A stretch of DNA of 64,000 nucleotides from Blepharisma stoltei ATCC 30299 (GCA_965603825.1 CBFDEM010000032.1:620001-684000); one strand, 5' to 3'; shown: positions 36,424 to 50,159, counted from the stretch's first letter. Numbers and translations: made by a program. The notes: a model not told the origin generated them from the letters alone.

Positions 36424-38583
36424 ATGGACTACTTCAACCAAGCTCATATACAGCAGAGCAGTGAAGAATCTCACGAGCTTTGACCTCCACTTAGTGCTAA
36501 AGACCGTGTCAATGAAGTCAAAATTTTGAAAGCTGGAATTACAATTAAAAATATTTTCTTTCGACGCTTATCAAGACGAGAAGCTTTTGCGAAATGAAAA
36601 GAAACAAGAACATCATACTGGTTCCAGAAGTTTAAATCAATGCTTGATGAAATCTCGAAAGAGCGTGATAGCTTGATGCAGGAAAATAGAGATCTCTTTT
36701 TAGCGTTAAAAAATGAAGATAGCTCTAGTTCAGAAGAAAATAATACTCATAAATCGGAAAGAATTTCTTTGGAACTGCCAAATATAGAAACTAATACAGT
36801 TCAAGAACTTTTTTCGGAGCTAGAACAGTTTATGGGGATTTTAAAACAAAAGAAATTTGTGCTGGATAGAGAATGGGTTAGGCTTAAAGAGGAGAAAGCA
36901 AAACGCTCGAGTAGAAGAAGGACAGAAAAAGATGATTTACAGCATATACACCAAATTAATGAAAGCATTGAAGCTCATGAAAGAAAACTGACTGAGAACT
37001 TAATGAATTACTCAATGAAATTAGAACGGCAAAGATCACATGAAGATGATGTAGAAAGAGGCCACTTCCCCACAAAATCAGCCCAATTCCAAAGCCCATC
37101 CAAGCTAAGCGAAAATCTAGACAAATTCAAAAGCAGCCTATTTCGTGGCTCAGACCCAACAGATTTCTGGGCAAGTGCTCCAAAAACAGATATTAATGAA
37201 AAATTAAAAACTCTTGAACAAGAGCTAATTAAAGAGCAGCAAAAACAAAAAGCCAACCGAGACAGACTTCAGCAAGAATATCAATTATTAGCACGAGAAA
37301 AAAAAGAAATCAAAGTAAAAGAGGAAGAATTAAAGGAATATCAAAGCTTTTTAGAAAGAGAAGGAAAACACATTCAAAAAAGCTGGCTTGAGCTCAGCCA
37401 ACTAGCTGATTCTTTAGAAACTAAACAAGGAGCGAAGCTGAAATGTTTGGCTGATAAAAGATGCCAAAGCTGGGACTGTTTTTCTAGTAAGCTATCAGAA
37501 TCTAGCTTTATTCAGCTTGAAGAAGGAGGAATTAACAACAAAGGATGAGATGAAAATATTTCCCCAAAAGAAAACGAAATTTTTGTGACTGACCAAGTAA
37601 TTCCTAAAGACTATTTTTTCACTGAATCGGTGTCAAAAATTGATCCTATTCATGATATTAAAATTGAGCCTGATGAAAGCTTTTCCCCTTATAAGCCTCT
37701 TCATTTTGAAATTACTCAATCTAAAAACAGCACTATTACTGGATTTTTGAAACAAATAAAAAATGATCTTCTGATACAATGAATAAAATATTCTCAAAAA
37801 TCAAATTATCGAATTGCGTTTTATTTATGAAAATATAATTGTTTAAAAGATAAAAATGAAAGCCCAAGAGAAGTTTTGTTAGATATATTATGACTAAAAC
37901 GACGCAAAGAGCTTAAGGCACAAGGACTGCTTACTATTGTAAAAAATATTTAGGAAAATTACAGTAAAAAACGAAGAGAATTCGAAACTAGTGCTTTTGC
38001 AAAAAAACAAAAAAAATTATTCCAAACCCATACCCTTCGAGTTCTAAAAGCTACCACAAGGCATTGGAGGCAGAGGATTTTATTTTTGATTAAAAAATAC
38101 CTTTACAAATGATTCTCAAACTCACTTTCCAATAAATCCAGTGAGCTTTGTGTGACGTTAAAAAATATCCCTCCTTCTAATCCGCCTCAAAACCAGGTTT
38201 TAAGTGTCACTACTTTAAGGGCAGATTTATCAAACAGCTCTGTATTTGATTTAAGTGCTATCACTTTACATGAAAAAAATGTCGGGATTATTAAATTTAT
38301 CTGCTTTTTGTCAAAAATTCAAGGAAAGCAAGAAAGAAATATAAATATAAGATTCAATAAATGGAATGCTTCAACAAAGAAAAAAAGCTTTGAGAATATG
38401 AAATCGGTACTTAAAGAGTTCGAAAATAGGATATCAACATTGAAAATTCAAGATACTGCATTTAGAACTGAAATTATTATACAGCAGAAAAAGCTTGAAT
38501 CTAAGCTCTCACAAATGAAAACTGTGCTGAAAAATTTGGCAGCTTGCAGTTCAACAAATAATTCCAATGCAAAAATTCAATAA
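36424..38583 (+). CDS. Long coiled-coil protein with scattered F/LxxW motifs (possible Sfi1-like centrin-binding repeats)
   Basis: One frame from ATG 36424 via several TGAs and intron 37939-37953 to TAA 38581. Confidence 0.7.
37939..37953 (+). other. 15-nt intron GTAAAAAATATTTAG
   Basis: Removes an in-frame TAG; A at -6. Confidence 0.88.
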
Positions 38584-38923: not shown

Positions 38924-39619
38924 ATGAAAATCTATATAGAGCTGATTAAAAGAATTGAAGAAGGAAACAGCTTAGAAATAGCTGCCAAAAATTTAAAGCC
39001 TAAGCTTGTCCACATTATTGAGACAATTAAACAAGAAATTGATTTATTAAAGCAACAAGAAATTTTGCTTCAGATAGCTTGTAACCACTACGATGGATTA
39101 GCTCAGAAATTTCCAGATAGAGTGAGTTTCTTAAATGATGTCTCTAGAGCTGACATGTGTGAGGTTCGTTCATTAGCCCAACCTCATATGCTTGTCCAAA
39201 TGGTAGCTGAGGGAGTCGGCATTCTACTGAATGAAAAAGAAAAATGAAATTCTTTTTATCAAAAGCTTCCTAATGGAGTATCAGCTTTATTGGATGTTGA
39301 ATATAATCAACTTTCTGAGCAAATCCTATATGATTTAGGAACGATTGTTAATGCCTATAGAAATAACACCAGGGCTTTTTATATGGTATCTAGAGCTACA
39401 GCAAAATTATTCTGCTTTTTATTAGCTACTTATGACTTAGCAATTACAATTAGAGATAATTTCCCACAGTTTACAAGCTTCAAAGATATTGATAGACTTG
39501 CAAGAAAAGAGCTTTTTGAATATAGCAACTTGGAAGCTGTTAGAAATAAAATAAAGAATAAAGAAATGGAGTTAGATTTATTGATACAATCGGACTTAAA
39601 GTTATCCAAAATATTATAG
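38924..39619 (+). CDS. Stand-alone dynein stalk/microtubule-binding-domain-like protein, copy A (231 aa)
   Basis: Coiled coil-FP-..DMCEVRSLAQP.MLVQMVAEGVGILLNEKEKW(TGA)...LLDVEYNQLSEQ...VSRATAKLFCF...FP-coiled coil. Confidence 0.75.
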
Positions 39620-39860
39620 AAGTATAAAACTATTTTTTTTAAATTAATAAAATAGCAGATGCTACTCTTATTCTCTGATAATCGAAATCGAAAAGCAAAA
39701 TATTTTTGAATACTACAGCTATTTTGCAATTTTAAAAAACCGTAGAGCGCTTCCAATTATCAAGAGACTTTAGATCTCATAACATTAAATTAATATCTTT
39801 ATTGAAATTAATATATTTAAATTCATTATTCTAATAAAAATTATAAATAAAATAAATATT

Positions 39861-40549
39861 ATGAAAATCTATTCAGAGCTGATTAAAAGAATTGAAGAAG
39901 GAAACAGCTTAGAAATAGCTGTCAAAAATTTAAAACTTAAGTTTGTCCACCTCATTGATACAACTAAACAAGAAATTGATCTATTAAAGCAACAAGAGAC
40001 TTTGCTTCAGATAGCTTGTAACGATTAGCTCAGAATTTTCCAGACAGAGTGGGTTTCTTCAATGATGCCTTTAGAGCTTCCAAATACAGGTATGAGAGGT
40101 TTACATTTGTTAGACCTCCAATGTCATTCCAAATTTTAGCTGAAGGAGTCTGCATTCTACTAAATGAAAAAGAAAAATGAAATACAATTGGTGGAAAGCT
40201 TCAAAGAGTATCAGCTTTATTGGATGTAGAATATAATCAACTTTCTGAGAAAATCCTATATGATTTAGGAACAATTGTTAATGCCAATAGAAATAACATC
40301 AGTGCTTTTGATATGGTATCTACAACTGTAGCAAACTTATTCTGCTTTTTATTGACTACTTATGACTGAGCAATTACAATTAGAGATGATTTCCCACAAT
40401 TTGCAAGCTTTAAAGATATTGATAGACTTGTGAAGAAAGAATGTTTTGAGTATAGCAACTTGAAAGCTGTTAGAAATAAAATAAAGAATAAAGAAATAGA
40501 GTTAGATTTATTGATACAATGGGACTTAAAGTTATTCAAAGTATTATAG
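39861..40549 (+). pseudogene. Dynein MTBD-like copy B, frameshifted
   Basis: Net 10-nt deletion (tgtaac^gattag versus tgtaaccactacgatggattag in A) gives TAG at 40026; the rest aligns to copy A. Confidence 0.8.
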
Positions 40550-41564
40550 AAGTTTAAAACTTTTTTAATAAATTAATAAAATAGTATATATTTCTAATAT
40601 CTTCTGATACTTATATTAATACAAGCATCAGTCCATCTTATAAAATTTATTTGATTAAGTGTTTAATTCATCACTTAACTTCTAAATTTTATATTTTGCA
40701 AGTCAACCCTGATTGGACAATGTTTTGATAGGGTTGGGATCAGCCAAAGTTAGAACACTGTCACCAGAGGAAGTCTGTTGGAACTTAGAATGATCTCAAG
40801 TAGAAATGTATTGTTGACTTAGGCACAGAAAAACAAGTAGAGTCCTTTCTTTTCTTTAAGGGTCTCGCTCATCACGAACTCTAAGACGTAAATTTATGCT
40901 TTAAATGTCTCCCTCCCAGAAGCAGGCAGGAATGCACGTGATGTCATTTAGGCAATTGCCTCTCTACCTTCTCCACTACAAAAGAAATTTTTTGGTCTTT
41001 TTGGGAAGATAAAGCGTCGAGTGTAGTGATTTTCTAGAGATAAATAGAAAATAATTAATTGCATATTGCCCATTATTGCAGAGTTAGCCTTAATTAATTT
41101 TCTTTTCTTCTTGCTTTCCAGCTAAATCGAGTATTTTTTGGGGCAAGTGAATTGAGTAGAATGCTTCTGATTCATTTTCCTCTTTCACACTAAACTGATT
41201 TTTGAAAAAAAATACGCCAAAAAACAATAGTCGTTATAATATAGGCGTCTTGTGAAGGAACCTTTTCATTTTGATATTATCCAAAAATAGTCCCTGAGCT
41301 TGAACAGCATCAAATACAAGTTGATTGCTGATATTTGAATAAATTTCCTAGGATAATATAAATTCTTCTCTTCTTCTACTCCATTCAGTGCAGGAATTGA
41401 TTAGAAAGCCTGTCCAATATCCTCCATGCGTAAAAATTTATGATTAAAAAGAAAAGCCATTGAGAGTTTCCAATTATCAAGAGATTTTAGAGCAAATAGG
41501 TTCTATATTTAAATAATATATATAAATTCATTACTCTAATAAAAATTATAAATAAAAAAAAAAT

Positions 41565-42260
41565 ATGAAAATCTATTCAGAGCTAATTAAAGGCATTGAA
41601 GAAGGAAACAGCTTAGAAATAGCTGCCCAAAATTTAAAGCCTAAGCTTGTCCACATTATTGAAACAACTAAACAAGAAATTGATTTATTAAAGCAACAAG
41701 AAATTTTGCTTCAGATAGCTTGTAACCATTACGATGGATTATCTCAGAAATTTCCAGATAGAGTGAGTTTCTTAAATGATGTCTCTAGAGCTGACATGTG
41801 TGAGGCTCGTTCATATTCCAGACCTCCAATGCTTGTCCAAATTGTAGCTGAAGGAGTCGGCATTTTATTGAATGAAAAAGAAAAATGAAATACTTTTTAC
41901 CAAAAGCTTCCTTATGGAGTATCAGTTTTATTGGATGTTGAATATAATCAACTTTCTGAGAAAATCCTATATGATTTAGGAACAATTGTTAATGCTTATC
42001 GAAATAACACCAGAGCTTTTGATATGGTATCTAGAGCTGCAGCAAGATTATTCTGTTTTTTATTGGCTACTTATGACTGAGCGATTGCAATTAGAGACTA
42101 TTTCCCACAGTTTACAAGCTTCAAAGATATTGATAGACTTGTAAGAAAAGAGTTTTTTGAATATAGCAACTTGGAAGCTGTTAGAAATAAAATAAAGAAT
42201 AAAGAAATAGAGTTAGATTTATTGACACAATCAGACTTAACGTTATTGAAGATATTTTAG
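41565..42260 (+). CDS. Dynein MTBD-like copy C (231 aa, intact with TGA=Trp)
   Basis: DMCEARSYSRPPMLVQIVAEGVGILL..W...VSRAAARLFCF; closest to copy A. Confidence 0.78.
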
Positions 42261-42572
42261 AAGTATAAAACTTTTTAATAAATTAATAAAATATTATATG
42301 CTACTAATATATTTTGTAAATATGTTTTTGTCAATAATCTGCAGTTATGAGCTCTTATGATTTTTGAACGAAAAAGAAATTTTGCAAAATCTAGAAGATT
42401 TTAAATTCTTAAAATAATTTTGAATACTACAATTATTTTGCAGTTATATAACAAACGAGAAAGATTCCAATTATCAAGAGATTTTAGAGCTCATAACATT
42501 AAATTAGTATCTTTATTTAAATCAACACATATAAAATTTCATTACTATAAAATCATAAATAAAATAAATATC

Positions 42573-43271
42573 ATGAAAATCTATTCAGAGCTGATTAAAA
42601 GAATTGAAGAAGGAAAGAGCTTAGAAAAAGTCGCCAAAAATTTAAAGCCTAAACTTGTCCACCTCATTGAGATAAATAAACAAGAAATTGATCTATTAAA
42701 GCAACAAGAGATTTTGCTTCAGATAGCTTGTAACCACTACAATGAGTTAGCTTATAATTTTCCAGATAGAGTGGGTTTCTTAAATGATATCTCTAGAATT
42801 GACATGCATGAGATTTATTCATATTCCCGACTTCCAATACTTGTCCGCATGGTAGCTGAAGGAATCAGCATTCTACTTAATGAAAAAGAAAGATGAAATA
42901 TTTTTTATAAAAACCTTAATTATGATGGATTATCAGTTTTATTGGATGTTGAGTATGATCAACTTTCTAAGCAAATCCTATATGATTTAGGAACTATTGT
43001 TAATACCAATCGAAATAATATCAACACAATTTATATGATATCTGTAGCTGCAGCAAGATTATTCCACTTTTTATTAACAACTTATGACTGAGCGATTACA
43101 ATCAGAGATAATTTCCCACAGTTTTCAAACTTCAAAGATATTGATAGACTTGTAAGAAAAGAGATTTTTGAATATAGCAACTTGGAAGCTGTTAGAAATA
43201 AAATAAAGAATAAAGAAATAGAGTTAGATTTATTGATACAATTAGACTTAAAGTTATTTAATCTATTTTAG
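42573..43271 (+). CDS. Dynein MTBD-like copy D (232 aa, intact)
   Basis: ATG homologous to A/C starts; open to TAG 43269 with TGA=Trp. Confidence 0.75.
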
Positions 43272-43801
43272 AATTATAAATTTTTTTTTTTAAAAATTAA
43301 TAAAATATTATATACTCTAAAAGAGCGTCGAAATACTTCCTCCCAGGTATTCATAAGCACTTGGTGCTTCAAATACCATGGTGGAATATTTGAGTTTCAC
43401 TATCCATCTGTAATGCTTTCTAGGCCTGACCAGAACTTGGCTCACCATCTGCATTTTGGCTCCAAGTGCATAATTTAAAAAGATGAATTATCTTCCAGAA
43501 TCAATAAACGTTTTACAGATATTAATTGCAGCTCTGATTGCCTTTCTTCATAATTTTATATATTATGTATCTCTACTAAAGTGGAAAACTAATTAAACAA
43601 TTTAATATTTAAACTACAATGAGCTGTGATGTCAAACATTAATTAAAAGCTGATAATTTAATTTTAAAAATACAAAGTCGAACAAATTCTAAGCCAGAAG
43701 TAATTTATACACTTCATTTCTCCAAGCAGTAATGAGTTTAGATTTTATTGGTCGCCTATATAAAACTAAAATATTTTATTAAAGTTATTTTACATATAAC
43801 T

Positions 43802-44517
43802 ATGCTAATAAATATGAATATTTATTCAGAGTTCATTAAAGCTATTGAGCAAGGCACCAGCTTTGAAGTAGCCGCAGCCAATCTCAAGCCTAAACTTATC
43901 CACCTTATTGAGACTACTAAACAAGAAATTAATTTATTAAAGCAGCAAGAAATTCTGTTGCAGACAGCTTGCAACTACTATAATGATTTAGCTCAGAATT
44001 TTCCAGATAGAACAGGCTTTTTAAAAATTTTTGATAGAATAGAATTGTTGGAGCTTGGTTCATTTTCCTGGCCACACCCTATTATCCCTGTAGCAGAAGG
44101 CATCAGCACAATTCTAAATGAACACGGAATTTTTATGAAAAACTAATTAATCCTTTGCTACCTTCTTTAATGAATGTTGATTATAATGATATTTCTGAGC
44201 AAATCCTACAGGATTTAGGACTAATTGTGAATTCCAATCGAAATAATATTAATCAGATATACAGCATGTATAGAGGTGCTGGGAGATTATTTAGCTGGCT
44301 AGTAACTACTTATGATTGAGCTATTACAATTAGAGACCATTTCCCAAAATTTTCAAATTTTAAAGAAATTGATAGACTGATAAAAAAAGATTTCTTAGAA
44401 TATAGCTCCTTATGCGCAGTCATTAATTCAATAAAAAATAGAGAAAAAGAACTAGAATTATTAGAAAATGCTGATCTTCTAATTACAGATATTAATCACA
44501 ACACTAATTTGCCTTAA
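43802..44517 (+). pseudogene. Dynein MTBD-like copy E, frameshifted
   Basis: Net 10-nt loss across the KEKW codons relative to copy F gives TAA at 44144; downstream half still aligns. Confidence 0.75.
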
Positions 44518-44799
44518 TTCATAATTTTATATATTAGTGTTATTATTCTGGAATTTTTTACTAAAATGGAAAATCGTTAAATAATTTAATATTTAAACTA
44601 CAATGAGCTGTGATGCTAAACATTAACTAAAAACTGATAATTTAATTTTAAAAATGCAAAACCTATCACACTCTAAACCAAAAGTAATTAAAAAACTTAA
44701 AAACTATTACACTTCATGACTCCAAGCAATAAGAATTTAGATTTTATTGACTGATCCCTGTAAAACTAAAATTTTGATTAAGTATTTTACTTAGAACTA

Positions 44800-45519
44800 A
44801 TGCTAATAAATATGAATATTTATTCAGAGCTAATAAAAGCTGTTGAGCAAGGTACCAATTTTGAAGTAGCCGCAATCAATCTCAAGTCTAAAATTATCCA
44901 TCTTATTGAGACTACTAAACAAGAAATTAATTTATTAAAACAGCAAGAAATTCTGCTGCAGACAGCTTGTAACTACTATAATCGTTTAGCTCAGAATTTT
45001 CCAGATAGAATAGGTTTCTTACAAAATATATCTCTTAGAGACATGGTGGAGCTTCGCACATATGCCCGGCCTCACCCTATTATCATCCCTGTAGTAGAAG
45101 GAATTAGCATAATTCTAAATGAAAAGGAAAAATGAGTGAATTTTTGTCAAAAATTAAATTTCAACTGACTACCTTATTTAATGAATATTGATCATAATGC
45201 ACTTTCTGAGCAAACCCTACAGGATTTAGGACTAATTGTAAATGCAAATCGAGATAATATTAGTCAGATTTACATGATGTCAAGAGCTGCTGGGGAATTA
45301 TTTCGCTGGCTAGTAACTACTTATGATTGAGCTATTATAATTAGAGATCATTTCACACAGTTTTCAAATTTTAAAGAAGTTGATAGACTAGTAGAAAAAG
45401 ATTTCTTAGAATATAGCTCTTTATGTGCAGTCATTAATTCCATAAAAAATAAAGAAAAAGAGCTAGATTTATTAGAAAATATTGAGCTCCCAAGGATTAA
45501 TAAAATTTTAGGACTATAA
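44800..45519 (+). CDS. Dynein MTBD-like copy F (intact)
   Basis: DMVELRTYARPHP..VVEGISIIL..W...MSRAAGELFRWLVTTYDW; open to TAA 45517. Confidence 0.78.
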
Positions 45520-45947
45520 ATTTATATTATCTTAAATTAAGACAGCGTTTATTATATTTTATTATCCTCCTCTCTTATATACAGCACAAAGTACTTGAGG
45601 TTAGCTCATATTCCATCCACTCTTGGTAGAAATAAGAAACACTACATTTGTATTTTTTGGCTGCATATTCATATAAGTTTATAGGATTAGTACTTAGATA
45701 TTGTTGCGACTACATTGTTACGTATTTGGGTACTCATTATAGCTCTTCCAATAAAAAACATTTTCAAAAATTTGACGTAAATACGCTCTATCCGATAATT
45801 AATTTTTAAAATACAAAATCGAACACACTCTAAGCCGTAAGTAATTTATAAACCTCAAAATTACTACACTTCATTTCTCCAAGCAGTAAAGAAGTTAGAT
45901 TTTCTCTAAAAACTAAAATTTTTATAAGGTTATTTCACTTAAAACTA

Positions 45948-46666
45948 ATGCTAATAAATATGAATATTCATTCAGAGCTCATTAAATCTATTGAGCAAGG
46001 TAACAGCTTAGAAGCAACCGCAGTCAATCTCAAGTCTAAACTTATCCACCTTATTAAGACTACTAAACAAGAAATTAATTTATTAAAACAGCAAGAAATT
46101 CTCTTGCACACAGCTTGTAACTACCTCATGATTTAGCTCAGAATTTTCCAGATCGAAGGGATTTCTTAAAACATTTTGAGAGTAAAGACATGGGAGAACT
46201 TCGCCCATATTCCCGACTTCACACTCTTCTTATCCCTGTAGCAGAAGGCATGAGCACAATTCTAAAAGGAAAGGAAAAATGATATAATTTTTCTCAAAGA
46301 TTAAAGGTACCTGTGATACCTTATTTAATGAATATTGATCATAATGCACTTTCTGCGCAAACCCTACAGGAAATAGGACTAATTGTAAATGCAAATCGAA
46401 ATAATATTAATCAAATGTGAGGGTTATCACTAGCTGCTAGGGGATTATTTGGCTGGCTAGCAACTACTTATGATTGATCTATTACAATTAGAGATCGTTT
46501 CCCACAGTTTTCAAATTTTAAAGAAGTTGATAAACTGGTAGAAAAAGATTTCTTAGAATATAGCTCTTTATGCACAGTCGTTAATTCCATACAAAATAAA
46601 GAAAAAGAGCTAGATTTATTAGAAAATTATGAGCTTCCAAGAATTAATAAACTTTTAGGACTATAA
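45948..46666 (+). pseudogene. Dynein MTBD-like copy G, frameshifted
   Basis: 1-nt deletion after aactac near 46125 gives TAG at 46134; the remainder is open in the shifted frame. Confidence 0.7.
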
Positions 46667-46708: not shown

Positions 46709-47875
46709 TTATCCTCCTCTGCTGATATAAAGCACAAAAGTATCTCCTATCCTCAGCTCTAGTGCTTTATGTCTGTCATATACAAATCCCATCCTTTTTA
46801 CTTCAGTCACTATTTCTACACCAGGCTTTTTAATTTCAATCTGAATCCCTATCCTTGATACACTATCAGGTACAATACCCGCTTTTTCAGCTTTATAAGT
46901 ATTTCTTGACACAGTCACGTCAACCCCTGCAAATTCGCTTCTAACTAGCTTCAAAAAAGGGTAAAAATAGTCATACACATATACTTGGTTAGGCTTCCCA
47001 TAATATTCTCCATCATATCACTCAGTCTGTGACAGCTCAAGCTCACAATGTCTGGACACATTATAAAGATAAAGCTTTTTCTTTATACCGTCTGAGTCAT
47101 CCTGAGGAGTTTTTGGAAATTCAGGCTCTAATTGTAAAGATTTTAAGATTTCGTGTGTATTTTGGATTATTGGGGCTTGCCAATGGACACTTTCAAGCTT
47201 AATCAGGCCCATTAAATTGAACCAGTTAATAGCAATTTCTATATTATCGCTTATACACACAGCAGTAATTTGTTGTGTGAAAGCTCTTCTGATGTCTTCT
47301 CCATTAAATTTGCATTCGTCTCGATGTGCTCACAATTTTCTTTTGCCTTTATTTATGCAGTCGAACTTGAATTCTGATTTATATACATAATCAGATGAGT
47401 ATAGCTTGTAAGTGTACCTTAGTTTAATAGTGTGGTTTATTAATATTGGCAGAAGCTCAGCAACGATTATTCTATCAACCCTTATTCCTTTTCTTTCAGC
47501 CACAGCAATATTGGTGATATCATGGTAACTTTTTTTGAAGACTAATAAATGTGAATGAACTAATGCGAACTGAGATTCTACTGAGTTAAAAGCATGATCC
47601 ATAGCTTCCATAACTTTGACGTGTAGAGAAGCTGATAAAGCAAGAACTGTTCTTAAGTCACCCGCAAGATATTGCAGTATTCGAAAAAATGCAATTTCTG
47701 GGAGCGATAATAAGGATAGAGAGGATTTTGAATTTTGAGAGCTAAGGACTCTTTTAATCATACCTGTGTAAAGGTGTTTTCGTCTTCTTCTCATATTAGA
47801 AATATGTTTTGAACGTGTTAATTTCCCTTCGATTACTTCATCTGTTTCTTTTGGATGTGATAAATAAGGTCCCAT
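46709..47875 (-). CDS. Uncharacterised 388-aa protein with F-box-like motif
   Basis: Three ORFs in one frame joined by TGA at 47330 and 47018; LLSLPEIAFFRILQYL. Confidence 0.75.
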
Positions 47876-48045: not shown

Positions 48046-49464
48046 TTACTTTTGTATACCATTCATAAAGATCTCCAAAAATCTTTTATAGTCAATTTTT
48101 GCTTCCTTTTTCTCAATTGTTTTAATTAATTTACTTTCCACATCTTTATCTAATGCACAGCCTTCTCTTTTTATTGTTCTTCTAATATCATTTGCTGTTA
48201 TAAAGCCTTTTCTTTCAATATCGAAAAGGTCAAATATCGCCCAAATTTCTTCTTGGGAAAAATGATGCTTTGAGCATACTGCAGCTGCTAAAAATTCTGT
48301 ATAATTAATATTCCCATCTTTATCAGTATCAATTTCTTTTAAAAGCTCTTTGATTTTTTTTTCTGAAATGCTTATAGACGAGCTCTGCAAATGCTTTTGT
48401 AGCTGTTTTGTGGAAATCATCCCTTTATTTTCCTCATCAAGTTTGATAAATAATTTGTTTAGTTCTCTTAACTCATCGAAAGTTATGTTTTTAATCATCA
48501 AATTCAACAGCTCTTTACAAAATAGCGAAGACTTGCAATACTCTTGGAAAGAGACTATTAGAGAGCTATCAATCAGAGGATTATTGTCGGCAAAGATATG
48601 GAACCATTCATGATTTAATGCTTTTTTAGCAGAAATTCGTTTTGAAGGGTTCACTGACAGCAATTTTTTTATCAAGTCTTTCCCTGTGGATGAAATTTGA
48701 TTCCAACTGTCGCTAGTTGTATTAAATGATCCTCTTTTTATTTTATCAAATGTAAAAAATAAATCTTGGCAATAAAATGGCATTTCCCCATATAGCATTG
48801 TATACATTATTACCCCTATTCCCCACTCATCACATTTTTGGTTGTAATTGCCTTTGAGAACTTCTGGAGCTATGTAATAAGATGTCCCAAGCTGCTTATG
48901 CATTGATAAAAATTTGTTGTATTTTTTTGCAAAGCCAAAATCAATCAATTTTAATTCGTCGTGGTCTGGGGAGATAAATAAAAAATTCTCCGGTTTTATG
49001 TCTCTGTGAACTATTTTGTGGAGGTGTAAATAGTTTACAGCCATAAGGATTTGATTGATTAAAACTTGTGCTTCTGTCTCAGTATATTTGACTTTCTTAA
49101 GCATCCTGCCCCATAGGTGTCCACCTTCGCAATATTCAGTAGCTACATGGATACTTTTTTCATCCTCGTAAGCTTCGTAAAATCTAATAATATTTGGATG
49201 GTCTACAGATTTAAGCATTTTCACTTCTCTTAAAACTTTAGCTCTGCTGTAGTCGCTAGCACCTTTGGATATTGATTTAATTGCAACCTTGAGTGATGAG
49301 TCTGATGAGAAGGCTTCTCTGACAACTCCAAAGTGACCAGCTCCTATTATTTTTCCAAACCGATAAACTGTGCGGACAGAAATTTCTTGTATGGTTTCAC
49401 AAGAATTGTCTAAAATTGACCCGAGTGAAACTCGGTGTTGTGGCTTACTTACTACTATTCCCAT
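48046..49464 (-). CDS. Calcium-dependent protein kinase (CDPK)
   Basis: GAGHFG, VAIK, HRDIKPEN, DFG, APE, followed by EF-hands (DTDKDGNINYTE); MG N-terminus. Confidence 0.95.
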   Translation of the reverse strand: MGIVVSKPQHRVSLGSILDNSCETIQEISVRTVYRFGKIIGAGHFGVVREAFSSDSSLKVAIKSISKGASDYSRAKVLREVKMLKSVDHPNIIRFYEAYEDEKSIHVATEYCEGGHLWGRMLKKVKYTETEAQVLINQILMAVNYLHLHKIVHRDIKPENFLFISPDHDELKLIDFGFAKKYNKFLSMHKQLGTSYYIAPEVLKGNYNQKCDEWGIGVIMYTMLYGEMPFYCQDLFFTFDKIKRGSFNTTSDSWNQISSTGKDLIKKLLSVNPSKRISAKKALNHEWFHIFADNNPLIDSSLIVSFQEYCKSSLFCKELLNLMIKNITFDELRELNKLFIKLDEENKGMISTKQLQKHLQSSSISISEKKIKELLKEIDTDKDGNINYTEFLAAAVCSKHHFSQEEIWAIFDLFDIERKGFITANDIRRTIKREGCALDKDVESKLIKTIEKKEAKIDYKRFLEIFMNGIQK

Positions 49465-50159
49465 AATCTTTAATAATAAATATCTATTATAAATGGAAAT
49501 AGGTAGATTTAAAAAAAAAATTAGATTGCTTGAGCCGAGTGACCTTGTTATTAATGAGCATTAAAATATAGGACTTTTTCATGCTATTTTAAGGTTAGTT
49601 ATTATTCTTTAGATTTATAATAATGAATTTACATATTAATATTACTGAATATCATGACCATTGGGCCCAATCATTTAGTTATTATTTTATAATTTTTAAA
49701 ATTTGAAATAATTCATCTGAGAAATTTGTAAAAATAATTTTGTTATGAAAATTAGTTTATAAAAATAAATGTTTTAATCATAATTGTTTTAATTAAAGTC
49801 ATTAAGTATCAACAATTTTCAAAAATTTTTAATAATTTGACATCATGCATTTTTTGAAATTTAGATTAAAAAAAAGGCAAAAGGGCTAACTTATAAAGAG
49901 ATACAAGTCAGTTTTATATTAAATTTATACAGACAATTAGATTTGATGCCACTTAATTATAAGAATAAAAGAAGCCCGTATAGAGCGTTATCTCCCTTAA
50001 AAATTTAAAAACTTCAAAAAATAAGAAACTTTCGTAAAATATTTTAATTCATAATATTAATTTAGTCCATTTTTAAGTAAATTTAAAAGGATCAGTATAA
50101 ATTTATGCTTTGACTTTATCATTTAAATCGCATTTTATTTTTATAAAATTGTATAAAAT

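What the first reader, a model, noticed from the sequence alone, without database searches (positions are those of the whole stretch)
39125..46445. Variation among MTBD-like copies concentrates in the predicted microtubule-contact helices H1, H3 and H6
Seen: the coiled-coil flanks are nearly invariant (KQEI(D/N)LLKQQEILL; F(S/T)xFK(D/E)(I/V)DRL), while three short windows differ in almost every copy. H1 A-G: RADMCEVRSLAQP / RASKYRYERFTFVRP / RADMCEARSYSRP / RIDMHEIYSYSRL / RIELLELGSFSWP / LRDMVELRTYARP / SKDMGELRPYSRL. After the Trp: NSFYQKL / NTIGGKL / NTFYQKL / NIFYKNL / (deleted) / VNFCQKL / YNFSQRL. H6: AFYMVSRAT / AFDMVSTTV / AFDMVSRAA / TIYMISVAA / QIYSMYRGA / QIYMMSRAA / QMWGLSLAA. Established: H1, H3 and H6 form the tubulin interface of dynein. 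Inference: diversifying selection on the binding face, suggesting specificity for tubulin isoforms or PTMs, or an arms race with a non-self ligand.
Basis: partly seen in the sequence, partly recalled or inferred. Interest (0 to 1): 0.82.

Follow-up and report, generated by a model that had tools for sequence, protein, structure and literature searches.

The report
Variable tip on motor-less dynein-MTBD mini-proteins
Seven tandem genes of the ciliate Blepharisma stoltei encode small proteins built like the microtubule-gripping tip of dynein without the motor; they do differ most at that tip, but the changes run at about the neutral rate and three copies are frameshifted, so lost constraint explains the pattern better than an arms race.

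Summary
The three windows have about twice the amino-acid entropy of the rest of the protein (random placement reaches this in 67 of 20000 trials).

The homology is real: a profile of the four intact copies hits dynein heavy-chain MTBDs (E=3e-9). An AlphaFold model (pLDDT 88) places the windows on H1, H3 and the start of H6.

- Copies B, E and G each carry one frameshifting deletion, and their terminal branches evolve at omega about 0.9.
- Among the intact copies A, C, D and F, site models find no omega>1 class (p=0.43).
- H3 (omega 0.2-0.6) and H6 (0.3-1.0) are at or below neutrality.
- Only H1 reaches omega 1.0-2.4, at nominal p of 0.006-0.03, depending on partition and on which copies are included. 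A-D also show recombination.
- The basic tubulin-contact residues conserved in dyneins are mostly gone, notably in H3.
- Site-by-site constraint is uncorrelated with that of the MTBD superfamily.

Best reading: a young, species-restricted birth-and-death family whose coiled-coil scaffold is under purifying selection while the former microtubule face has lost dynein-type constraint. Positive selection confined to H1 remains possible but unproven.

The same array was noted before in this scan (s1-646657).

The parts
38924..39619 (+). Copy A, intact 231-aa gene (P0003); Leu replaces the otherwise conserved Trp in TYDW
39861..40549 (+). Copy B, frameshifted: 10-bp deletion after codon 54 (break at 40023), plus an in-frame 6-bp insertion in H1
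41565..42260 (+). Copy C, intact 231-aa gene (P0002); slowest terminal branch (omega 0.20)
42573..43271 (+). Copy D, intact 232-aa gene (P0001); has lost the conserved Arg of H1 (Tyr) and of H6 (Val)
43814..44517 (+). Copy E, frameshifted: 10-bp deletion at the KEKW/H3 start (break at 44126); the public annotation holds only the 110-aa 5' ORF (P0005)
44812..45519 (+). Copy F, intact 235-aa gene (P0004), the only intact member of subfamily E-G
45960..46666 (+). Copy G, frameshifted: 1-bp deletion after codon 55 (break at 46125); the public annotation holds only a 158-aa 3' ORF (P0012)
39146..39184 (+). H1 window in copy A (residues 75-87: helix H1 75-82 plus the H1-H2 loop). This is the only window with omega of 1 or more
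39248..39268 (+). H3 window in copy A (residues 109-115, after Trp108 = TGA at 39245-39247). Omega is below 1, and the dynein-conserved basic residues at 112/113 are replaced in all copies
39374..39400 (+). H6 window in copy A (residues 151-159, start of H6). Omega 0.3-1.0
39081..39101 (+). GTAAC...TTAG segment at the end of CC1 (21 nt in A, D and F). The frameshifting indels of B (40018-40028) and G (46117-46136) both fall inside its counterparts

Best explanation
The array is a young tandem family in Blepharisma stoltei, not yet seen in other taxa. Each gene encodes a protein of about 27 kDa made of a short N-terminal helix, an antiparallel coiled-coil hairpin (CC1, CC2) and a dynein-type six-helix microtubule-binding domain (MTBD), with no AAA+ motor. 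The family evolves by birth and death: four copies are intact and three carry one frameshift each.

Purifying selection acts on the coiled-coil arms and on the stalk-proximal base of the bundle (H5-H6 loop, H6/CC2 junction). The microtubule-proximal tip (H1, H3-H4 loop, start of H6) and the C-terminal tail have lost dynein-type constraint and change at roughly the neutral rate. This makes the variation look concentrated on the 'contact helices'.

Shown: homology, fold, frameshifts, rate heterogeneity, and loss of the conserved basic contact residues. Inferred: the tip no longer needs to grip tubulin in the way dynein does, and the proteins work mainly through the scaffold, for example as static binders or adaptors. 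Positive selection may add to the turnover in H1 but is not demonstrated.
For: Homology and fold:
- The profile of A, C, D, F hits dynein MTBDs in the PDB (DNAH6 E=3e-9, DNAH10 1.6e-7, cytoplasmic dynein constructs 6.5e-5). It also hits dynein loci of the same genome.
- AF2 with a 126-row alignment gives pLDDT 87.8, and every top Foldseek hit is a dynein stalk/MTBD.

Decay:
- B, E and G each have one frameshift.
- Their terminal branches run at omega 0.89 against 0.38 for the rest (p=0.0016). The intact copies A and D also run at 0.9-1.0.

Rates:
- Flanks omega 0.2-0.45, H5 0.2-0.3, H3 0.2-0.56, H6a 0.3-0.97, H1 1.0-1.8.
- Independent contrasts give H1 1.46 and H6a 1.43, neither above neutral; for intact copies only, 0.99 and 0.38.
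- Intact-only site test M1a vs M2a p=0.43, with 43% of sites at omega=1.

Lost constraint:
- Positions that are K/R in 65-97% of 117 other MTBDs are Y/C/M in all intact array copies (112, 154) or variable among them (75, 82). Position 113 (74% K/R) is K only in D.
- The MTBD core has net charge -6 to +3 and 6-12 K+R, against +3.2 +/- 3.2 and 16.3 in other MTBDs.
- Site variability in the array is uncorrelated with that of the superfamily (rho 0.04-0.10). Sites free in dyneins are frozen in the array: G139, N143, R146, N148, Y170, D171, I174, I176, D178, F180.
- The outlying paralogue H (P0009) has lost even the near-invariant E80, PP and W108, yet keeps an open frame and conserved flanks.
- In the canonical paralogue I, the flanks are also better kept between species than the MTBD (78/77% vs 27-69%).
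Against: Site models with all seven copies do prefer an omega>1 class (M1a-M2a p=0.003; M8a-M8 p=0.001; omega2 about 2.6 for about 11% of sites). Seven of 15 H1-window sites have posterior above 0.5. The signal survives separate trees for the 5' and 3' halves (5' p=0.006). In the 5' partition it holds even for intact copies only (p=0.031). Among A, C and D the H1 window has about 14 nonsynonymous and at most 1 synonymous change.

B's private changes are concentrated in H1-H4 rather than spread evenly, as a long-dead pseudogene's would be.

E80, W108 and S156 are kept in all intact copies, so some tubulin binding may persist. No binding or expression data exist.
Confidence: 0.55

Rival explanations
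1. Diversifying (positive) selection acts on the tip of the MTBD, chiefly H1. It tunes each copy to a different ligand: tubulin isotypes or PTMs, or a new non-tubulin or non-self partner.
For: - Omega>1 class in the seven-copy site models (p=0.003 and p=0.001).
- H1-window omega 2.4 in A, C, D (p=0.006-0.017).
- 5' partition p=0.006 for seven copies, 0.018 without B, and 0.031 for intact copies only.
- Candidate sites cluster in H1 and the H3-H4 loop.
- The genome holds at least 24 tubulin-family loci, some divergent, so varied targets exist.
- The scaffold is conserved while the tip varies, as in other variable binders.
Against: - No omega>1 class in intact copies over the whole gene (p=0.43) or in the MTBD core partition (p=0.22 and 0.90).
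- H3 and H6 are below or at neutrality.
- Independent contrasts are not above neutral.
- No H1, H3 or H6 site has a posterior above 0.95.
- Recombination among A-D and many double-hit codons can inflate site tests.
- Three of seven copies are broken.
- The region was chosen post hoc and many tests were run.
Confidence: 0.3
2. The contrast is largely produced by gene conversion. The flanks look invariant because they are repeatedly homogenised among tandem copies, not because they are selected, while the central segments escape conversion.
For: - Quartet-informative sites among A-D switch from AC|BD (13 sites, mostly 5') to AB|CD (9 sites, mostly 3').
- Sub-trees differ between gene thirds.
- Synonymous divergence among A, C, D is very uneven: CC2 pS 0.06 against 0.25-0.34 in H2, H5 and H6b.
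- Identical runs of 56-94 nt are longer than expected.
Against: - Between the two subfamilies the flanks have diverged synonymously (pS 0.48-0.61) yet keep pN/pS at 0.36-0.49.
- Flank omega is 0.2-0.45, significantly below 1, even when the synonymous rate is left free.
- Against paralogue H on another contig, the flanks still show omega 0.2-0.27.
- H1 has a low pS among A, C and D, so it has not simply escaped conversion.
Confidence: 0.1
3. The whole array is non-functional DNA: seven decaying copies of a once-functional gene. The 'intact' ones are merely not yet hit by a stop or frameshift.
For: - Three of seven copies are frameshifted.
- A and D terminal branches run at omega 0.9-1.0.
- A has lost the conserved Trp of TYDW.
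- No array-type relative was found in the word-index protein collection, which holds a Blepharisma transcriptome record for paralogue I (MMETSP1395).
- Pfam no longer recognises the copies.
Against: - Four open frames of 231-235 codons in a 30% GC genome.
- C and F terminal branches run at omega 0.20 and 0.37, and internal branches at 0.29.
- Flanks are significantly below neutral among intact copies.
- The broken copies have only one lesion each and no further stops.
Confidence: 0.1

Closest known systems
Dynein heavy chain stalk and microtubule-binding domain (Pfam PF12777 'MT'; structures 3ERR, 5AYH, 6RZB, 6RZA)
   Same: Antiparallel coiled-coil arms carry a six-helix bundle. There is profile-level sequence homology (E=3e-9). 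The Glu of H1, the Trp of H3 and the Ser of H6 are kept. The helices H1-H6 align one to one.
   Different: - There are no AAA+ modules: the proteins are 231-235 aa in total, with a private N-terminal helix.
- They do not reach PF12777 in Pfam.
- The conserved basic contact residues (112, 113, 154; variably 75, 82) and partly the PP motif and Trp165 are lost.
- The MTBD core is neutral to acidic rather than basic.
- The constraint pattern is inverted: arms are conserved and the tip is free.
Paralogue I of the same genome (P0006, 225 aa, UniRef 'Dynein heavy chain coiled coil stalk domain-containing protein') and its 70%-identical Blepharisma relative in a transcriptome (P0007)
   Same: Same stand-alone architecture, including the N-terminal helix motif. 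The flanks are also better conserved than the MTBD between species.
   Different: Paralogue I is a single-copy gene on another contig. It passes PF12777 (64 bits). It keeps K75, R82, K86, R112, K113 and K154 and has a net charge of +2. It is 18-23% identical to the array copies.
Motor-less proteins with 3-9 tandem MTBD repeats in other eukaryotes (P0010, P0011, P0013, P0157; Picozoa P0017)
   Same: These also carry MTBD modules outside a dynein heavy chain. They are the best non-Blepharisma matches to the family profile (E 1e-63 to 1e-30).
   Different: The repeats sit in one polypeptide rather than in separate tandem genes. They have canonical basic MTBDs and lack the long hairpin arms and the N-terminal helix. 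Their taxa are mostly unknown (metagenome contigs).

Membership tests
Dynein stalk/MTBD (PF12777) | Match to the Pfam PF12777 model above its gathering score | tested here: not met
   No PF12777 hit for A, C, D, F, their pieces, or H, even at E up to 10. Paralogue I passes at 64.4 bits.
Dynein stalk/MTBD (PF12777) | Significant profile-to-sequence similarity to dynein heavy-chain MTBDs | tested here: met
   The A1 profile against the PDB gives DNAH6 3e-9, DNAH10 1.6e-7, DNAH2 1.7e-6 and DYNC1H1 constructs 6.5e-5. Dynein-sized ORFs of the own genome match at 2e-12 to 1e-7.
Dynein stalk/MTBD (PF12777) | Six short helices H1-H6 between antiparallel coiled-coil arms CC1 and CC2 | tested here: met
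   AF2 model, pLDDT 87.8: CC1 17-62, H1 75-82, H2 89-101, H3/H4 108-123, H5 132-144, H6 149-179, CC2 186-230. Foldseek top hits are 5ayh, 3wuq, 3err, 6rzb, 3j1t and 6rza. Caveat: the alignment used for folding contained dynein MTBDs, and a 4-row alignment gave pLDDT 56.
Dynein stalk/MTBD (PF12777) | Near-invariant residues of the superfamily (Glu in H1, Pro-Pro before H2, Trp in H3, Ser and Trp in H6) | tested here: inconclusive
   E80, W108 and S156 are kept in all intact copies. Pro-Pro is present only in B and C. Trp165 is present only in E-G (Phe in A-D).
Dynein stalk/MTBD (PF12777) | Conserved basic residues on the tubulin-facing helices | tested here: not met
   Position 112 (86% K/R in 117 MTBDs) is Y/C in the intact copies. 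Position 113 (74%) is Q in A, C and F and K in D. Position 154 (65%) is M. Positions 75 and 82 (91% and 97%) vary. Core net charge is -6 to +3 against +3.2 +/- 3.2.
Dynein stalk/MTBD (PF12777) | Embedded between AAA4 and AAA5 of a heavy chain of about 4000 aa or more | tested here: not met
   Complete ORFs of 231-235 codons, each from ATG to stop and separated by 240-1000 bp spacers. There are no AAA domains in the proteins.
Dynein stalk/MTBD (PF12777) | Binds microtubules | not testable with these tools
   Needs co-sedimentation or TIRF assays.
Gene family under diversifying selection | Site-model likelihood-ratio test favours a class with omega>1 | tested here: inconclusive
   Seven copies p=0.003 and 0.001. 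Intact four p=0.43 and 0.19. Intact plus H, not significant. 5' partition p=0.006 (seven copies) and 0.031 (intact). MTBD core p=0.22 and 0.90. Dropping any two of B, E, G removes significance.
Gene family under diversifying selection | Selected sites lie on the ligand-binding surface (H1, H3, H6) | tested here: inconclusive
   Sites with posterior above 0.5: H1 window 7 of 15, H3 0 of 12, H6a 1 of 15, H3-H4 loop 4 of 11, C-terminal arm 4 of 51. The only two sites above 0.95 are in the H3-H4 loop and the tail.
Gene family under diversifying selection | Members are functional, expressed genes | not tested
   Three of seven copies are frameshifted.

The most novel reading that the evidence does not exclude
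The dynein MTBD fold has been recruited in a ciliate as a stand-alone recognition module. Its coiled-coil scaffold is fixed, and its H1 tip is diversified by positive selection among tandem paralogues. This would give each copy a different target: a tubulin isotype, a PTM state, or a non-tubulin ligand.
Probability: 0.22. Interest if true: 0.75.

Novelty: new variant of a known kind. Interest (0 to 1): 0.5.

Why it matters
The dynein MTBD is known almost only as part of the motor. A family of motor-less stalk-plus-MTBD proteins, multiplied in tandem and with its constraint pattern inverted, would show how a motor's track-binding tip can be re-used.

Such proteins could act as a static microtubule-associated protein, as a competitor of dynein, or as a new binding scaffold. 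Heterotrich ciliates also have an elaborate microtubule cortex.

For this particular claim, the practical message is cautionary. Clustered amino-acid variation on a known interface is not by itself evidence of an arms race. Here most of it is explained by relaxed constraint and by decaying copies.

Tried and rejected
- **Pfam.** Searches of pieces and of the full proteins gave no hits for the array.
- **Single-sequence PDB search.** Searches with pieces gave only sub-threshold dynein hits.
- **AF2 with a 4-row alignment.** This failed (pLDDT 56).
- **Word-index protein search.** It found only the window's own proteins.
- **ESM Atlas search by features.** No result. The search by shape returned only dynein-fragment clusters.
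- **Relic eighth copy in the 1-kb B-C spacer or elsewhere in the window.** None found by tblastn with code 4.
- **Rescue of the frameshifts by tiny introns.** Arithmetic and splice-site checks argue against it for B and E, and G remains open.
- **Variability explained by sites that vary in all MTBDs.** Rejected, since rho is 0.04-0.10.
- **Literature on stand-alone MTBD proteins.** Nothing found.
- **Model coordinates.** These are not exposed, so variable sites were mapped at helix level only, not onto a docked tubulin complex.


Full report
**What the DNA is.** The window is G000:C32:620001-684000 of a 41.46-Mb, 64-contig, roughly 30% GC genome. Reading TGA as Trp lengthens the ORFs. A paralogue found later carries the source name Blepharisma stoltei. 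The genome paper describes a 41-Mb macronuclear assembly of 64 telomere-to-telomere contigs, UGA=Trp, introns mostly 15-16 bp, about 145x coverage and HiFi DNA reads (bioRxiv 10.1101/2021.12.14.471607). The tools translate with table 11, so I worked with the database copies of the proteins (P0001-P0004) and with code-4 scripts.

**Anatomy of the array.**
- Seven + strand copies lie head to tail: A 38924-39619, B 39861-40549, C 41565-42260, D 42573-43271, E 43814-44517, F 44812-45519, G 45960-46666.
- There are two subfamilies, A-D and E-G, about 70% identical at the nucleotide level. The tree is (((A,C),B),D),(E,(F,G)).
- A, C, D and F are open frames of 231-235 codons.
- B has a 10-bp deletion after codon 54 (break at 40023) and an in-frame 6-bp insertion in H1.
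- E has a 10-bp deletion that removes the KEKW motif (44126).
- G has a 1-bp deletion after codon 55 (46125). Each of these three shifts the frame.
- The public annotation holds only a truncated 5' ORF for E (P0005) and only a 3' ORF for G (P0012).
- No further relic copy is in the window.

**Check of the observation.** All quoted strings are present. The three windows have mean entropy 1.17-1.37 against 0.69 for the rest. Random placement of equal-sized windows reaches the observed sum in 67 of 20000 trials. The H3-H4 loop and the last ten residues are equally variable.

**Is it an MTBD?**
- Pfam gives nothing.
- A profile of the four intact copies hits dynein heavy chains in the PDB exactly at the MTBD: DNAH6 3e-9, DNAH10 1.6e-7 over residues 70-221, cytoplasmic dynein stalk constructs 6.5e-5 over 34-177.
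- The same profile hits dynein-sized ORFs of the same genome.
- With a 126-row alignment of family members and MTBD segments (A4), AlphaFold gives pLDDT 87.8. The model has an N-terminal helix 2-12, CC1 17-62, H1 75-82, H2 89-101, H3/H4 108-123, H5 132-144, H6 149-179 and CC2 186-230.
- All top Foldseek PDB hits are dynein stalks or MTBDs.
- The literature places the tubulin interface on H1, H3 and H6 (Koonce and Tikhonenko, cited in PMC4298687), or on H2, H3, H4 and H6 with H1 as the affinity switch (PMC6629372).

**The wider family.**
- The genome holds more motor-less stalk-plus-MTBD proteins: H (P0009, 241 aa, C12:681521-682246), I (P0006, 225 aa, C46) and J (P0059, 166 aa).
- I passes PF12777 and has a 70%-identical relative in a transcriptome collection (MMETSP1395; P0007).
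- An exhaustive profile search found 1898 relatives. Only Blepharisma proteins match full length as short proteins.
- The next-best hits are proteins with 3-9 tandem MTBD repeats and no motor, from metagenomic eukaryotes and a picozoan.
- No array-type sequence appears outside this genome.

**Selection analysis.** I built a 248-column codon alignment, dropping only the partial codon at each break. I wrote a GY94-F3x4 code-4 likelihood program, and its M0 likelihood reproduces iqtree2 (-3957.36).

Whole-gene pairwise omega is 0.23-0.91. Rate heterogeneity is overwhelming (M0 vs M1a 2dlnL=172).

Site models (M1a vs M2a unless stated):

| Data set | Result |
|---|---|
| All eight sequences | p=0.005 |
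| Seven array copies | p=0.003, omega2 2.6 for 11.6% of sites; M8a-M8 p=0.001 |
| Intact A, C, D, F | p=0.43 (57% of sites at omega 0.1, 43% at 1) |
| Intact plus H | not significant |
| Any one of B, E, G dropped | p=0.03-0.05 |
| Any two of B, E, G dropped | p>0.12 |

Fixed partitions:
- Flanks 0.2-0.45 and H5 0.2-0.5. Flanks are significantly below 1 in every set; H5 is significantly below 1 with a shared synonymous rate.
- H3 0.19-0.56, below 1.
- H6a 0.3-0.97.
- H1 1.0-1.3 in intact copies, 1.76 in all seven with a shared synonymous rate (p=0.0006) but 1.29 (not significant) with a free rate, and 2.4 in A, C, D (p=0.006; p=0.017 with a free rate).

Other tests:
- Three phylogenetically independent contrasts give H1 34 N: 7 S (pN/pS 1.46, binomial p=0.24). 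Intact-only contrasts give 0.99.
- Posteriors above 0.5 fall in H1 (7 of 15), the H3-H4 loop (4 of 11), H3 (0 of 12) and H6a (1 of 15). Only a loop site and a tail site exceed 0.95.

**Confounders.**
- Informative sites among A-D switch from AC|BD in the 5' half to AB|CD in the 3' half. Synonymous divergence is very uneven. Both point to conversion or recombination.
- With separate trees, the 5' part (arm plus H1) still gives p=0.006 (seven copies), 0.018 (without B) and 0.031 (intact only). The 3' part gives 0.07, and an MTBD-core partition gives 0.22 and 0.90.
- Many candidate codons differ by two or three bases, and single-hit models read such codons as excess nonsynonymous change.
- Many tests were run on a region picked after inspection.
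- I therefore treat omega>1 in H1 as suggestive only.

**Branch pattern.** The terminal branches of B, E and G run at omega 0.89 against 0.38 elsewhere (p=0.0016). A (1.0) and D (0.9) are also near neutral, while C (0.20), F (0.37) and the internal branches (0.29) are constrained. This is the signature of birth and death, not of a uniformly maintained, diversifying family.

**State of the interface.**
- In 117 other MTBDs, positions 75, 82, 112, 113 and 154 are K/R in 91, 97, 86, 74 and 65% of sequences.
- In the array, 112 and 154 are never basic. Position 113 is K only in D. Positions 75 and 82 vary.
- The MTBD core has 6-12 basic residues and net charge -6 to +3, against 16.3 and +3.2 +/- 3.2.
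- Site variability in the array does not track that of the superfamily (rho 0.04-0.10). Conserved dynein sites vary, while a set of sites that are free in dyneins is invariant in all seven copies (H5-H6 loop and H6/CC2 junction).
- Paralogue H has lost E80, the Pro-Pro motif and W108 and carries an insertion in H1, yet keeps an open frame and conserved arms.
- In paralogue I, the arms are 77-78% identical between species and the MTBD helices 27-75%.
- Across these mini-proteins, selection thus sits on the hairpin and the base of the bundle, the reverse of what holds in motors.

**Mechanism proposed.**
- Shown: stand-alone stalk-hairpin/MTBD fold, tandem amplification, three lesions, purifying selection on the arms, near-neutral turnover at the tip, and loss of the basic contact residues.
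- Inferred: the array proteins no longer depend on a dynein-type electrostatic grip on tubulin and act through the conserved scaffold. The tip is free to drift, with possible adaptive change in H1.
- The tubulin-isotype idea is not excluded. The genome has at least 24 tubulin-family loci, some divergent.

**Limits.** Power is low with four intact sequences.

Noticed in passing
window 40018-40028 (B), 46117-46136 (G); counterparts 39081-39101 (A), 42730-42750 (D), 44969-44989 (F): The frameshifting indels of B and G both fall in the same short GTAAC...TTAG segment at the end of CC1, which has the outline of a tiny intron. Removing it would restore the frame in G (20 nt) and arithmetically in B (11 nt, which is too short for the 15-16 nt norm). 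Against an intron: C lacks the 3' TAG, E lacks the 5' GT, and the public annotation treats the segment as coding.
   Followed up: partly
G000:C12:681521-682246 (L016:1501-2226), G000:C46 (L021:1354-2028, minus strand), P0059: There are three further motor-less stalk-plus-MTBD mini-proteins in the same genome. H is 241 aa with a degenerate H1-H2. I is 225 aa, has a canonical MTBD, passes PF12777, and has a 70%-identical relative in a Blepharisma transcriptome. J is 166 aa.
   Followed up: partly
P0010, P0011, P0013, P0157 (L029:1001-5707), P0017: Proteins of 390-1570 aa made of 2-9 tandem MTBD repeats with no AAA+ motor occur in metagenomic eukaryote contigs and a picozoan. P0157 is a single 4.7-kb ORF with nine repeats. 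I found no description of such proteins in the searched literature.
   Followed up: partly
G000, e.g. C27:583425-586873, C35:624356-627354, C2:209601-212804: There are at least 24 loci with a tubulin C-terminal domain, including tandem clusters and several divergent, lower-scoring members. The organism therefore has many tubulin paralogues.
   Followed up: no
window 48049-49464 (-): The second ORF downstream of the array (window 48046-49560, minus strand) encodes a calcium-dependent protein kinase type protein (Pkinase plus EF-hands). The flanking ORFs at 36640-37545 (+) and 47333-47875 (-) have no Pfam match.
   Followed up: partly
window 42573-43271 (D) and 45960-46666 (G), H1-H2 loop: D and G share the codons CGA CTT (Arg-Leu, with Leu replacing the near-invariant Pro87) although they belong to different subfamilies. 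This is either a parallel change or a very short conversion tract.
   Followed up: no
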